A DNA stretch of 64,000 nt from Oikopleura dioica (taxonomy: Eukaryota > Animalia > Chordata), in NCBI GenBank assembly GCA_907165135.1, contig OU015567.1, positions 6,386,001 through 6,450,000 of the forward strand. The letters run 5' to 3'. Of the stretch, positions 28,738 through 33,877 are shown in pieces. Numbering within the stretch: position 1 is the stretch's first letter; every line of letters begins with the position of its first letter. Under the pieces are notes generated by a model. It was not told the DNA's origin, did not search any database, and saw only the letters and a list, made by a program, of their open reading frames with translations. A program made the translations under genes and the position numbers.

Positions 28738-31700
28738 ATGCCTAAGAAGAAGGCAAACAAGAAGGTTGATGATGACTGGGAAAACGACGTAGAGGAGATG
28801 GAAGCGGAGACCAACCAGGTTTGAAATCAGCTTTCTGAAATTTTAACTATTCTGTTCAATACAGGAGGCCCCTGAAGTATCAGCCAAGGCTGCTCCAGCT
28901 GCGGAGACTGTTGATGACATCGATGATATGTGGTCGGACGATGACAAGAAGAAGAAAGGAAAGAAGGGCAAGAAAGGAAAAGGGCAAGACGCCCAAGAAG
29001 ATCAAGCCCCAACTCCAGGTTTTATTCTTTCTCGAATTGTCATATTCCTTACACTTCGTTTTTAGAACCTGCTGCTGAGGGCCCTGCCATAAAAACGAAG
29101 GCCCAAAAAGCTGCTGAAAAGAAAGAGCGTGAAAAGCAAAAGAAAAAGGAGCAAGCAGCCAAGAAGAAAAAAGGCGGTCAGCAAGAAAAGACCGTGGCCG
29201 AAGTTGCCGCTGAACTCGCTGCTCAAGATGACGAGCCCCAAGACACTGGCAAAAAGGGCAAAAAAGGAAAGAAAGGCGAGGAAGAAAAGCCTAAGAAAAA
29301 GAAGGGCGGTCCGCCAGCTGCTGCTCTCCGTGAAATGCTCGAAGCTCAACGCGCCGCTGAAGAAGCTGAAAAGAAAAGGCGCGAGGAAGAAGAAGCCAAG
29401 GCTGCCGAAGCACTCAGGAAACATAACGAAAAGCTCGAGCAAGAACGACTACGACGCGCGAAGAAGAACGAGCGTGAAAAGAAACGTCTCGAACGACGAA
29501 AAGAAGAGGGTAAAGCCCTTACTGAGAAGCAAAAGCGAGACAAGGCGAGAGCAGAGGCTCTCCTAGCTGATCGCGGAATCGATGTTGATGATGTCGATCA
29601 AGAAGAGGTCAAAGCTGCTCCAGTCAAAATCCTATCAAAAGCACAAAAGAAAAAACTCATGGAGCAAGAAAGACTCCAGCGTGAAGCAGAAGAAGCCGCG
29701 GCAAAAGAAGCTGAAAAGGCCGAAGCTGAAGAAGAGGCAGAAGAAGGCCAAGAAGACTCTCCCGAAGTCAGTGAAGCTGACGAAGAAAGCTCTGGTGACG
29801 ATTGGGACAATTCCTCTTCTGACGAAGACGAGGCGGAGAAAGACGAGGCGGAAGAAGAGGCCGAGAAGCCTGCCGTAAAAGAAGCGCCCAAAGCTGCTGC
29901 CAAAAAAGAAACCGAAGACTTGAGTGTCAAACAATCCGGCCCGCGACCTGATGACTTCTTCGAAATCGCCGACGTTCACAAGCGAATCAAAAAGCGAAGA
30001 AAATACAACAAGGAAAACGCGATCGAAGGCGATTACAGATGTCCCATTGTTTGTGTCCTTGGCCACGTAGATACCGGAAAGACCAAATGCCTCGACAATC
30101 TTAGACGGACGAACGTCCAAGACGGAGAAGCTGGTGGTATCACGCAGCACATTGGCGCAACGAACGTTCCTCTTGATTGTATTGAAAAGCGAACCTCGTT
30201 TGTCAAAAAAGTCGCGTTCGGCGAAAAACTTGACATTCAAATCCCCGGCTTGCTTATTATCGATACACCCGGTCACGAGTCTTTCTCGAACTTGAGATCA
30301 AGAGGATCCTCTCTTTGCGATGTTGCTATTCTTGGTAATGAATAATGCAATGAATCTGATCATTACCATATTTCTAGTGGTTGATATCATGCACGGTCTC
30401 GAAAATCAGACCCGTGAGTCCATTAAGCTTCTCAAAAAGAAACGCTGTCCCTTTGTCGTCGCTTTGAATAAAATTGATAGAATTTATGAATGGAAGTCTT
30501 CCCCTCATCCAGAGTTGCAAATTTTTGAAATTTTTTTCTGAGCTGAGCTAGCTGAGCTGAGGTTGAAACTGAGCTGAGCTGAGCTGAGCTGGCTCCTCAT
30601 AAAAAACAACTGAGCTGAGCTGAGCTGAGCTGGTTTTTTTCAAAAAAATTGAGCTGAGCTGAGCTGGGGCATATTTGAAAATTTTTGAGCTGAGCTGAGC
30701 TGAGCTGACGATTTCTCAAACTGAGCTAGCTGAGCTGAGCTGACCATTTTTTTATGCTGAGCTAGCTGAGCTGAGCTGAGCTAGCTGAGCTGAGCGGAGA
30801 AAGCTGATTTTTATTTACTACAAAAAATGTCAAAATAATGTGTTGAAGCGAATTTCAACCTTCTTGAGTAGATGGACAAGGAGCCCCTGCCCTCACACAC
30901 CCCTAGACCAGCATCTCACTCGCAACATCGCACTTTTTTGACATAAAAAATTTATTCTGTCATTTAACAATAAGGAATTCTCCAAAATATTATACAGTGG
31001 TATCATTTATGTGGATGAGCCAATGTTTCAACCTTCTAGCGTAGATGGACAGGGAGCCCCTGCCCTCGCACACCCCTAGACCAGTCTCTCACATTCGCAA
31101 TCACATATTTACCATCTGTACTTTATTATTTTTTTATTGGAAGCCCTTTTTTATTTAATTTCTCTCTTGTTTCAAAGAAAACTCGAATTATTTCTATATA
31201 AAATTGACCAACAGGAAAGCATGAACAGAAAATACGTCGAAGTTTTTGAAAAAAAGACCAATCAAAAGTGGTTCGATCTTTGTCAGCTCAATAGACTGAG
31301 CTGAGCTGAGCTAGCTGAGCTGAGGTCAAAATTGAGCTAGCTGAGCTGAGCTAGCTCTTTTCGAAGAACCATTGAGCTGAGCTAGCTGAGCTGAGGTCAA
31401 ATTGAGCTGAGCTGAGCTGAGCTGACCCTCACCTCAAAATTTCTGAGCTGAGCTGAGCTGAGCTGTAGCTCAGCTAGCTCAGATAGCTCAGCTCAGCTAG
31501 CTCACAAAATTTGCAACTCTGCCCTCATCAAGTAAGTGGTTTTACTCGGAACAGCAGACTCATGCTTTCTAGGATGTTCGAAAAACGATTGATAATCAAA
31601 AGGAAAGCACGAGGAACCAGTTCAAGAAGCTCTATGACAATGTATATACACAGATGGCCGTTGAGGAGCTGAACGTCAAGTTGTTCTGGGAGCTTGAAGG

Positions 31701-33193
31701 CGAAGATGCAGCAGAATGGATCCCAATTGTCCCTACCTCCGCCATTACAGGTCAGATAAAAAGAATCTCTCATCATTAACTTTTTTTAGGTGATGGTATG
31801 GGCAACCTAATCGCTCAAGTCATCGATTCTGCTCAAAACATCGTCGGTAAAAAGATCACTTACAATGCGTAAGTCATAAAAACATCTTTATTTTTCTCAA
31901 CGATTAATTCAGCGGTGTCAAATGTACCGTTATGGAAGTGAAGACAATCGAAGGACTCGGAAAATCAGTAGACGCCATTCTTGTGAATGGCTGTCTTCAA
32001 AACGGCGACCAAATGGTCCTCGCCGGTCAGCAAGGACCATTCGCCACGCATATTAGGCAAATCTACACTCCTCCGGTCAACAAGGATCTACGAGTGAAAA
32101 ACGCTTGGGTCAAACATGACCGGGTCAAGGGCGCAACTGGTGTCAAAGTCGTCGGTCGAGGAGAAGAAATCGAAAAGGCACTTGCTGGCATGCCGATGTA
32201 CATTGCTCGGCAAGATGACGAAGTGGAATACTTCAAAGCAGAGCTTGAGGATGAAATCGGCGATGCTTTGGATGCGATTAGATGCTCAGGAGAAGGTGTC
32301 TACGTTCAGGCATCTACTCTTGGCTCTCTCGAAGCCCTCCTCGAATATCTTCGGTAAGAAAAAGTGGCTGAATTCAAACTTGACCGTCTTTTAGAACCGA
32401 AAAAGTCAAGTACTCTGGCATCAACATCGGCCCAGTCAACAAGCGTGACATCATGCGAGCGTCGACAATGCTTGAGCACGATGAAAAGTACGGAGTTGTC
32501 CTCGCCTTCGATGTTCCAGTCACCCGAGATGCACAAGAGCTCGCCGATAGTTTTAAACCGCCAATTAAGGTACTGCAAGCATTGTTACAGATGCTAATGA
32601 TTCGATTTAGATTTTCACGGCAAATATTATTTATCACTTGACAGACATGTTCGAGAAACATCTCAAAGACCAGAAGAAGCAAAAACAAGAAGAGCTCAAG
32701 GAAGTTGCCATCTTCCCTGCTAAAATGTCTATCCTGCCAGATTGTATTTTCGCAAAAAGAGATCCTATCGTCATCGGTGTCAAAATCGATGATGGCCAGT
32801 TGAGAGTAGGAGCACCAATTTGTGTACCAAACAAGGTTTGCAAGAGCTGCTTTGTCTTTGTAAAGACTGTGTTAAGGAAAACATGTGTATTGGCGCAGTT
32901 TCATCCATTGAAAGCAGTAACAAGCCGGTAGATGTGGCCAAGAAGGGCGAGGAAGTCTGTATCAAGATCGAAAACACGACAGGCGATGCACCAAAAATGT
33001 TGGGTCGCCACTTCGAAAAGACTGATTACCTCTGCACGAGGATATCCAGAGATGGAATCGACGCATTGAAAGAGTAAGTTTGAACTTTGCCCGGGCGTGA
33101 GTCATCCTTGTTTTCAGATGGTTCCGAGATGAAATGACGAAGCAAGATTGGAAGCTCTGCATTGAGCTCAAGAAGACCTTCAAGATCCTTTGA
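28738..33193 (+). CDS. EIF5B: Eukaryotic translation initiation factor 5B
   Basis: K/E-rich N-terminus, G-domain motifs [38 protein letters not shown] and NKID, and C-terminal domains ending [15 protein letters not shown]. Confidence 0.96.
30510..31521. mobile_element. Non-autonomous hAT-type element, 1012 bp, with subterminal (GAGCT)n arrays
   Basis: 15-bp TIR CAGAGTTGCAAATTT and 8-bp TSD CCCTCATC at 30502-30509 and 31522-31529. CAG...CTG termini with an 8-bp TSD are typical of hAT. No ORF. Confidence 0.93.
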
Positions 33194-33458
33194 GTGGTGC
33201 AATTCAATTGCGTTTATGTGATGTTGTGCAGCGATCACCGGGTCAAACGCGACCCAGTTCTATAGAATTTTTTACTTATGAGCCGGACCAACTTAAACTC
33301 CGCCAAGTTCATGAAAAACTAATAGGTCAATTTCTTCTTCTGTTCACGGTTCTGTTTACTTAACTGAGACAGTTAAGTTATCAGCGGTTCATTAGGTTTC
33401 AATTCCATGCATACTACGCCTAATCACCATTTTTGTCTATCCTAAAAATGGGTCGATA

Positions 33459-33847
33459 CTGAATATGTAACGAATGTAACGAATGTAACGAATGTAACGA
33501 GTTTGCTGACAATGTAACGAAAACGGAGACATGTTGTTTTTATTAGCTGATTCTAGAAACTTTTTCTAAAGAGCGATCTTGGGGAGTTTTACTAAATACA
33601 ACAATTTAACATATCCAAAATAGCAAAAAAAGCCAAAAAGGATACAGAATAGCATAAATATGGTAGATTCGTTTTCCATACCCGCTCTGAATGATTCAAA
33701 ACGCCCGCTCCGCGGGTAAAAATGTAGGAAACTCAAGGGGGTGAAATTAGAAAAACAAAAAATCTCTAGAATTTTACTGACAATGTAACGAGAAAAAGAC
33801 ATGTTTATGAGTTTTCGTTACATTCGTTACATTCGTTACATATTCAG
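33459..33847. mobile_element. MITE with TA TSD (Tc1/mariner-like), 389 bp
   Basis: TIR CTGAATATGTAACGAATGTAACGAATGTAACGA, built from ATGTAACGA units and flanked by TA on both sides (33457-33458, 33848-33849). Confidence 0.85.
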
Positions 33848-33877
33848 TACCGTCGTAAAAATGCTCTTCAGAATAAA

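What the first reader, a model, noticed from the sequence alone, without database searches (positions are those of the whole stretch)
30502..31572. 1-kb hAT-type element inserted in a coding exon of the core translation factor eIF5B
The TSD CCCTCATC is coding sequence (..KSSPHQ). The original donor GTAAGT now lies at 31532, 10 nt after the element. Unspliced RNA stops at 30539-30541, inside the G domain. Two splice routes restore the frame. (a) A GA donor at 30512 to the native acceptor at 31572 gives a single Q-to-P change. (b) A GT donor at TIR position 5 (30514) to AG 31500 followed by the native 41-nt intron adds 11 aa ([11 protein letters not shown]). As in the 3717 element, GT sits at TIR position 5. 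A null allele of eIF5B should be strongly selected against, so rescue by splicing or heterozygosity is expected.
Basis: partly seen in the sequence, partly recalled or inferred. Interest (0 to 1): 0.85.

Follow-up and report, generated by a model that had tools for sequence, protein, structure and literature searches.

The report
Young transposon splitting eIF5B exon
A 1-kb non-coding cut-and-paste transposon has recently landed inside a coding exon of the essential translation factor eIF5B in an Oikopleura dioica genome. Two DNA samples show only the interrupted copy, so the element is probably cut out of the RNA, but no RNA from carriers could be read to show this.

Summary
A 1012-bp non-coding element (30510-31521) has perfect 16-bp inverted ends and an 8-bp target duplication, CCCTCATC. 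It sits in exon 4 of eIF5B, 2 nt before the native 5' splice site, and read-through stops at 30539-41.

Seven public contigs of related Oikopleura lineages have the uninterrupted site with one copy of the 8-mer, so the insertion is derived and young. Contigs of two DNA samples cross both junctions, and neither shows an empty allele. This argues against an artefact. It also argues, less firmly, against a heterozygous null.

The rest of the gene is intact: 11 exons and 10 native GT-AG introns of 39-47 nt.

The splicing question stays open. The only RNA runs reachable come from a lineage about 10% diverged that lacks the insertion. No mRNA or protein of the window's own lineage was found.

My reading is removal at the RNA level, either by weak spliceosomal sites or by inverted-repeat-triggered 'SOS' splicing. 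The main rival is a masked null allele.

The scan has already noted at least eight similar exonic hAT insertions elsewhere in this genome.

The parts
28738..33192 (+). eIF5B gene. It has 11 exons and 10 native GT-AG introns of 39-47 nt, and is intact apart from the insertion.
   Evidence: tblastn of P0121 covers residues 1-981 across the region. P0121 is a 981-aa spliced eIF5B of Atlantic-type O. dioica. The related cluster of P0127 holds CBY15337.1, which UniRef names eIF5B of O. dioica. Pfam GTP_EFTU matches. Exon boundaries were read.
30378..30509 (+). Exon 4, the part before the element. It encodes the G4 motif NKID and ends ...YEWKSSPH.
30502..30509 (+). Left copy of the 8-bp target-site duplication CCCTCATC.
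   Evidence: D17. There is a single copy at the empty site in L001 and L002.
30510..31521 (.). 1012-bp non-autonomous hAT-like element.
   Evidence: TIR and TSD. The longest ORF lying wholly inside is 55 aa. Interior k-mer depth is 6-11 times that of the flanks, and 13 X1 contigs run on past the right end into unlike, mutually dissimilar sequence.
30510..30525 (+). Left terminal inverted repeat (16 bp, begins CAGAG).
   Evidence: It pairs with 31506-31521 in the RNA fold.
30539..30541 (+). First in-frame stop (TGA) if the element is not removed.
30538..30799 (+). Left subterminal blocks of (GAGCT)n separated by short spacers.
   Evidence: All 13 exact (GAGCT)3 matches in the window lie inside the element.
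30853..31092 (+). Internal pair of 67-nt direct repeats (30853-30919 and 31026-31092, 91% alike).
   Evidence: D4.
31282..31505 (+). Right subterminal (GAGCT)n blocks. The last 40 nt are in the inverse orientation (AGCTC) and mirror the left end.
   Evidence: (I8-I10, I15-I17).
31506..31521 (-). Right terminal inverted repeat.
31522..31529 (+). Right copy of the target-site duplication.
31530..31531 (+). Last two nucleotides (AA) of the original exon 4.
   Evidence: The empty site reads ...CATC|AA|GTAAGT in L001 and L002. The spliced mRNA contig L004 reads ...CATCAA|GATGTT.
31532..31572 (+). Native intron 4 (41 nt). Its donor AA|GTAAGT is the best of the gene, and its acceptor is ctttctag.
   Evidence: The intron position is conserved in L001-L003 and L005-L007.
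31573..31750 (+). Exon 5 (DVRKTIDNQ...).

Best explanation
Shown: a member of a young, multi-copy, non-autonomous hAT-like transposon family inserted into exon 4 of the single recognisable eIF5B gene of this Oikopleura dioica lineage, 2 nt upstream of the 5' splice site of intron 4. It duplicated 8 bp of coding sequence. The insertion is absent from every related lineage that could be read. It is present, with no visible empty allele, in two DNA samples.

Inferred: the allele still makes working eIF5B. The reasons are that the factor is generally essential, that the animals appear to carry only this allele, and that the rest of the gene is intact. The element must then be removed from the transcript.

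I favour removal as a separate unit whose junctions lie in or next to the two inverted ends, followed by normal splicing of the untouched intron 4. This could be done by the permissive Oikopleura spliceosome at weak sites, for example GT 30514 to AG 31500, which adds 11 residues. It could also be done by spliceosome-independent excision triggered by pairing of the inverted ends (SOS-type splicing), which leaves small indels, some of them in frame.

The scar would fall in the least conserved stretch of the G domain, just after the NKID motif.
For: - Insertion anatomy.
- Empty site in seven loci, of which six are genomic contigs of three or more lineages and one is a spliced mRNA contig with the native junction.
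- X1 contigs at depth 183 and 148 run unbroken from the flanks 27-28 nt into the element. That is close to the limit for a 31-mer graph entering a repeat.
- X2 contigs do the same, and no joint skipping the element is listed for either sample.
- No intron-less or second copy shows up in those DNA runs.
- The gene is otherwise colinear with full-length O. dioica eIF5B and has no other break.
- The site lies among columns whose top residue reaches only 32-48% in 246 eIF5B segments. The flanking NKIDRxYxW columns mostly lie between 83 and 100%.
- The 16-bp TIRs close the element as a stem in the predicted RNA fold.
- 11-12% of O. dioica introns are non-GT-AG (PMC8008620) and GA-AG is frequent (PMC7072748).
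- DNA transposons are excised from exons of worm and human mRNAs when their inverted ends pair (PMC12779559).
Against: - No RNA from a carrier was seen. Runs X20 and X21 are a lineage about 10% diverged and show no joint across the element.
- No mRNA-derived protein of the window's lineage exists in the collections searched.
- Every in-frame spliceosomal route uses sites well below the gene's native ones.
- The segment between NKID and the next conserved block has the same length in 245 of 246 eIF5B sequences. An insertion of 5-15 residues would be unusual.
- Contigs can drop minor variants, and X1 and X2 come from one study and perhaps one culture.
- Relatives of the element are found in poly(A)+ RNA of the other lineage, so removal is not universal.
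- SOS factors were not looked for in Oikopleura.
- Tc1 ends are 54 nt long, against 16 bp here.
Confidence: 0.55

Rival explanations
1. Broken allele. The insertion simply inactivates this copy of eIF5B by premature stop and nonsense-mediated decay. The animals survive on an uninterrupted allele that the contig data failed to show, or on an undetected paralogue.
For: - No restoring junction has been observed.
- All candidate splice sites are weak.
- Earlier notes of this scan describe many private exonic hAT insertions in the same reference genome that look like ordinary deleterious variants.
- Logan contigs show presence, not absence.
Against: - A heterozygous empty allele should break the 31-mer contigs at 30509/30510 and 31529/31530 and give a 1020-nt skipping joint. 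Neither is seen in X1 (depth about 150-180) or in X2.
- Two samples carry the insertion, unlike the private insertions reported elsewhere.
- No other copy of these exons, at 90% likeness or more, appears in the DNA runs.
Confidence: 0.33
2. One reading: (a) the GA donor at 30512 joined to the native acceptor at 31572, giving Q to P, or (b) GT 30514 joined to AG 31500 followed by the native intron, adding 11 residues.
For: - Both are in frame and free of stops.
- GA-AG introns are common in O. dioica (PMC7072748).
- Route (a) keeps the length of a segment that is length-invariant across eIF5Bs.
Against: - The donors match 1/8 and 2/8 of the consensus, against 4-7/8 for native donors.
- The GA donor lacks the reported AG|GAA context.
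- Route (a) must bypass the intact, strongest donor of the gene, 10 nt downstream of the element.
- The acceptor of route (b) has only 2 T among 13 upstream positions, against 5-8 natively.
- The paired TIR stem would bury both route (b) sites.
- At least 16 other in-frame G*-AG combinations exist.
Confidence: 0.2
3. Rescue at the DNA level. The active element is excised somatically by a hAT transposase often enough to restore the gene in most cells.
For: - The family is young and multi-copy.
- The TIRs and TSD are perfect, so the copy should still be mobile.
Against: - DNA contigs of whole animals show the insertion at full flank depth and no excision or empty-site product.
- hAT excision usually leaves footprints, which would often shift the frame.
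- Mosaic rescue of an essential factor needed in every cell is implausible.
Confidence: 0.03
4. Assembly artefact. The element was misplaced into the gene by the assembler.
For: The element is repetitive, and its interior could not be spanned by short-read contigs.
Against: - Unique flank-to-TIR junction sequences exist on both sides in two separate runs.
- The exact 8-bp duplication, compared with the empty site in relatives, is the signature of true transposition.
Confidence: 0.02

Closest known systems
Non-autonomous hAT-superfamily DNA transposons (Ac/Ds type; hAT MITEs)
   Same: - 8-bp target-site duplication.
- Short perfect TIRs beginning CAGAG, which fits the YARNG rule as I recall it.
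- Subterminal short repeats.
- No coding capacity.
- Multi-copy and nearly identical copies.
   Different: - No transposase or autonomous partner was seen, so the superfamily call rests on the ends alone.
- The TSD does not fit the loose nTnnnnAn preference.
- The subterminal repeats are unusually regular (GAGCT)n blocks.
Exonic DNA transposons removed from mRNA: SOS splicing (Zhao et al. 2025, PMC12779559) and earlier Tc1 and Ds observations
   Same: - A DNA transposon with pairing inverted ends inside a coding exon of a gene that apparently still has to work.
- No good GU-AG sites at the ends.
- The insertion lies in a poorly conserved stretch, the situation in which SOS splicing rescued rsd-3.
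   Different: - Removal was not observed here.
- The ends are 16 bp (plus imperfect subterminal pairing) rather than 54 nt.
- The host is a tunicate in which AKAP17A and CAAP1 were not checked.
- The element lies 2 nt from a splice site.
Introners and transposon-born introns (Micromonas and others; review PMC11282704), and MITE-derived non-canonical introns of Fritillaria borealis (Henriet et al. 2019, as cited in PMC13326754 and PMC11282704)
   Same: - A TIR-plus-TSD element in coding sequence of a larvacean with a permissive spliceosome.
- In-frame removal is possible on paper, including an AG...AC pair (30513...31517) that would add 15 nt.
   Different: - Introner families carry or co-opt usable splice sites and are documented as introns in RNA. 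Here the sites are weak and no RNA is available.
[quoted passage not shown] AG-AC splicing in Oikopleura is therefore not expected.
Other exonic hAT insertions noted by this scan in the same genome (for example s1-338578, s1-322901, s1-365281)
   Same: - The same kind of element, with the CAGAGTT end group.
- The same open question, and the same lack of carrier RNA.
   Different: Those were mostly private to the reference animal. This one is also present in a second sample, shows no empty allele in either, and hits a core translation factor.

Membership tests
hAT superfamily (non-autonomous member) | 8-bp target-site duplication | tested here: met
   CCCTCATC flanks both ends. The empty-site contigs overlap the two flanks by exactly 8 nt.
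hAT superfamily (non-autonomous member) | Short TIRs (about 10-25 bp) starting 5'-YARNG (criterion from my own knowledge) | tested here: met
   16-bp perfect TIR starting CAGAG.
hAT superfamily (non-autonomous member) | Mobilised by a hAT transposase (DDE with hAT dimerisation domain) of an autonomous partner sharing the ends | not testable with these tools
   There is no long ORF inside and no second copy of the TIR in the window. The host genome could not be searched.
hAT superfamily (non-autonomous member) | Repeated, mobile family | tested here: met
   Interior depth is 6-11 times the flanks, and 13 contigs in X1 (8 in X2) run on past the right end into unlike sequence. Contigs of other copies differ by 0-2 letters per 100-200 nt.
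Transposon-born spliceosomal intron (introner-like) | Removed from the transcript by splicing | not testable with these tools
   The RNA runs reachable are from a diverged lineage without the insertion. No carrier mRNA or protein was found.
Transposon-born spliceosomal intron (introner-like) | Element and/or TSD supply splice sites of ordinary strength | tested here: not met
   The best in-frame donors within the TIR or TSD match 1-4 of 8 consensus positions, against 4-7 for the gene's native donors. Acceptors in the right end have 2-3 T of 13, against 5-8 natively.
SOS-splicing substrate (PMC12779559) | DNA transposon with base-pairing inverted ends inside an exon | tested here: met
   The position is exonic. 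The 16-bp TIR stem, extended by subterminal pairing, appears in the minimum-energy and centroid folds.
SOS-splicing substrate (PMC12779559) | Heterogeneous non-GU-AG junctions near the ends in mRNA; dependence on AKAP17A, CAAP1 and RTCB | not tested
   There is no carrier RNA.
eIF5B | Translational GTPase domain plus full-length colinearity with known eIF5B | tested here: met
   PF00009 matches on exons 3 and 4. tblastn of a 981-aa O. dioica-type eIF5B covers all residues. The related cluster of P0127 holds a member that UniRef names eIF5B of O. dioica.

The most novel reading that the evidence does not exclude
Oikopleura dioica has an efficient RNA-level way of removing inverted-repeat transposons from coding exons. 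This could be its permissive spliceosome or an SOS-type, spliceosome-independent system. It would let an active hAT family sit homozygous even in an essential gene. This eIF5B allele would then be a natural reporter of that system, and a snapshot of an intron being born or enlarged next to an old one.
Probability: 0.45. Interest if true: 0.75.

Novelty: new member of a known kind. Interest (0 to 1): 0.5.

Why it matters
If the allele is functional, it gives a simple natural test of how a chordate with a tiny, gene-dense genome tolerates active DNA transposons. One RT-PCR across exons 3-6 in carriers would show whether junctions are spliceosomal (fixed, G*-AG) or SOS-like (heterogeneous, near the inverted ends). 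The first result would document the birth or extension of an intron in an animal. The second would extend SOS splicing, known from worms and human cells, to tunicates. If the allele is dead, it is an ordinary deleterious insertion variant in a laboratory line with a very active hAT family.

Tried and rejected
1. Reads. The two raw-read RNA runs of the same species label turned out to be a lineage about 10% diverged. They cover exons 5-7, show the native intron 31869-31912, and show nothing across the element. The tool only skipped the repeats at 30537-30671 and 31373-31475.

2. Protein collection (cluster members). This found only genomic read-through proteins of a close lineage with an empty site, and spliced full-length eIF5Bs of Atlantic-type lineages. 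Nothing came from the window's own lineage, and no fragment carried an altered junction.

3. JGI contigs by exon 5. Four loci were found, all of the 88% lineages.

4. A de novo splice-site model from the window failed. ORF-based intron candidates were mostly false, and the EM fit drifted to coding repeats. I fell back on the gene's own ten introns.

5. Rfam. Only sub-threshold hairpin-like miRNA matches in the palindromic GAGCT/AGCTC region.

6. Exon skipping was rejected. Original exon 4 is 134 nt, so skipping it shifts the frame, and it would also delete the NKID motif.

7. Fritillaria-type AG...AC removal (30513...31517, +15 nt, in frame by my own reading) was considered. It is unlikely, because the U2AF duplication tied to it is reported for the Fritillaria lineage (PMC13326754).

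8. Denoeud et al. 2010 could not be read.

Frames and short local peptides of candidate routes were computed only in a local script.

Full report
**What is there.** The window reads ...GAATGGAAGTCTTC-CCCTCATC-[element]-CCCTCATC-AA-GTAAGT....
- The element spans 30510-31521 (1012 bp).
- Its first 16 nt are the exact reverse complement of its last 16 nt.
- It is flanked by a perfect 8-bp direct repeat (30502-09 and 31522-29).
- Inside there are blocks of (GAGCT)n near both ends, with the last 40 nt inverted so that the ends mirror each other. There is also an internal pair of 67-nt direct repeats.
- No ORF lying wholly inside exceeds 55 codons.
- Nothing in Rfam reaches threshold.

**The host gene.** The exons on either side match the translational GTPase domain.
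- A 981-residue spliced eIF5B from Atlantic-type O. dioica transcript contigs aligns over its whole length to 28738-33192.
- A closely related cluster holds the GenBank O. dioica protein that UniRef names eIF5B.
- The alignment gives 11 exons separated by ten GT-AG introns of 39-47 nt.
- The only break is the element. It splits exon 4 two nucleotides before its 5' splice site, and read-through ends at TGA 30539-41.
- Earlier notes of the scan identify the genome as Oikopleura, and one note as the Okinawan reference. I did not verify the strain.

**It is a true, derived insertion.**
- Two ENA metagenome contigs about 5% diverged (L001 and L002, the latter from a record named as a marine metagenome under PRJEB4352) align to the window up to 30509 and again from 31522. 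The overlap is exactly 8 nt, so they have one CCCTCATC followed directly by AAGTAAGT.
- Four further genomic contigs of more distant O. dioica-type lineages (L003, L005, L006, L007) are also uninterrupted and keep intron 4 at the same position.
- L004 is a spliced mRNA contig that reads across the native junction.

**It belongs to a young, repeated family**.
- In DNA run X1 the element interior has 6-11 times the k-mer depth of the flanks.
- Thirteen X1 contigs leave the right end into unlike, mutually dissimilar sequence.
- Contigs of other copies differ from this one by 0-2 letters per 100-200 nt.
- The 8-bp duplication, the CAGAG start and the subterminal repeats fit a non-autonomous hAT element. 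No transposase could be examined, so this is a classification by ends only.

**Who carries it**.
- In X1 (probably the source sample), a 7.6-kb contig at depth 183 runs from the left flank to 30536. A 2-kb contig at depth 148 runs from 31494 into the right flank.
- In X2, another sample of the same study at depth 6-8, contigs cover 30435-30525 and 31495-31761.
- In a 31-mer graph these contigs go about as far into a repeated element as they can.
- An uninterrupted allele at comparable depth would force a branch at the junctions and give a joint skipping 1020 nt. Neither is seen.
- No intron-less or second copy of these exons appears.
- I therefore read both samples as carrying only the insertion allele. 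The caveats are that contigs can drop variants, that not all joints and pieces were listed, and that the two samples may come from one culture.
- This differs from most exonic hAT insertions reported earlier in this genome, which were private to the reference.

**Splicing could not be observed.**
- The two raw-read poly(A) RNA runs of the same species label differ from the window at many exon positions in all reads. They are from a lineage about 10% diverged, consistent with the 88% loci. They show the native intron 31869-31912 but no joint across the element.
- Searches of the protein collection with exon 3, with a close read-through protein and with a junction-spanning part of a database eIF5B found no product of the window's own lineage other than genomic read-throughs with the empty site.
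- The one metagenome scan found only the distant lineages.

**What the sequence allows**. I listed all stop-free, in-frame G*-AG combinations with the donor between 30470 and 30538 and the acceptor either in the last 140 nt of the element or at the native site. There are 18.
- Their donors match only 1 and 2 of the 8 positions of AG|GTAAGT. The ten native donors match 4-7.
- The GA donor lacks the AG|GAA context described for O. dioica GA-AG introns (PMC7072748).
- All acceptors inside the element lie in AGCTC repeats with 2-3 T among 13 upstream positions. Native acceptors have 5-8.
- The best donor of the whole gene (AA|GTAAGT) remains intact 10 nt after the element, next to its strong acceptor. 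Intron 4 will probably be spliced as usual, which argues against route (a).
- The predicted RNA fold closes the element with the 16-bp TIR stem, extended by subterminal pairing. That stem would bury the route (b) sites. It is also the feature that triggers spliceosome-independent SOS splicing of exonic DNA transposons in C. elegans and human cells. That process cuts at varying non-GU-AG positions near the ends and rescues genes when the scar is in frame and in a tolerant region (PMC12779559).

**Tolerance of the site**. In 246 distinct eIF5B segments the residues around the site (K-S-S-P-H | Q) are the least conserved of the region, with the top residue at 32-52%. They sit between the near-invariant NKIDRxYxW and the better conserved D-V. 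However, the segment has the same length in 245 of 246 sequences, and the exception looks like a retained intron at this same position. A substitution would be unremarkable. An insertion of 5-15 residues would be new for the family.

**Verdict.**
The element and its consequences are as described, but no junction is shown, the two proposed routes are weak, and the expected heterozygosity is not seen.
- I put about 0.55 on RNA-level removal that keeps the allele functional. Roughly 0.3 of this is spliceosomal use of weak sites and 0.25 is TIR-directed SOS-type excision.
- I put about 0.33 on a masked null allele, and a few percent on somatic DNA excision or artefact.
- In kind, this is a new member of known things: a young hAT insertion variant, with exonic transposons tolerated by RNA processing already described.
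- Its particular value is that it sits in an essential gene, is shared by two samples, and can be settled by one RT-PCR.

Noticed in passing
window 33455-33850: Between the eIF5B stop codon and the leucyl aminopeptidase gene there are inverted arms built of tandem 9-mers (GAATGTAAC / GTTACATTC) around about 300 nt. This looks like another small foldback or MITE-type element.
   Followed up: no
window 30639-30851 and 31278-31348 (reads of X20 and X21): Poly(A)+ RNA of the diverged lineage holds many reads with GAGCT arrays joined to a variant end, CAGAGTTGTAAATTTGG, in both orientations. Relatives of this element are therefore present in RNA there and are not always removed (tables 5 and 7).
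   Followed up: partly
It has the 8-bp duplication GTGCTAGC and long inverted ends starting CTAGGTC, with GT at positions 5-6 as in the eIF5B element. It is already noted by the scan as s1-390056.
   Followed up: partly
L001 2114-2155, L002, and one sequence in the alignment: Gene callers on metagenome contigs read straight through the tiny Oikopleura introns. This produces 'proteins' with 14-21 extra residues exactly at intron 4 (for example P0001). These are useful as empty-site evidence, but they are a trap for alignments.
   Followed up: yes
window 30830, 30979, 31226: At three positions inside the element, all X1 contigs carry a different letter from the window (table 3). Either the family majority masks this copy's own variants in the contigs, or the assembly has small errors within the repeat.
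   Followed up: no
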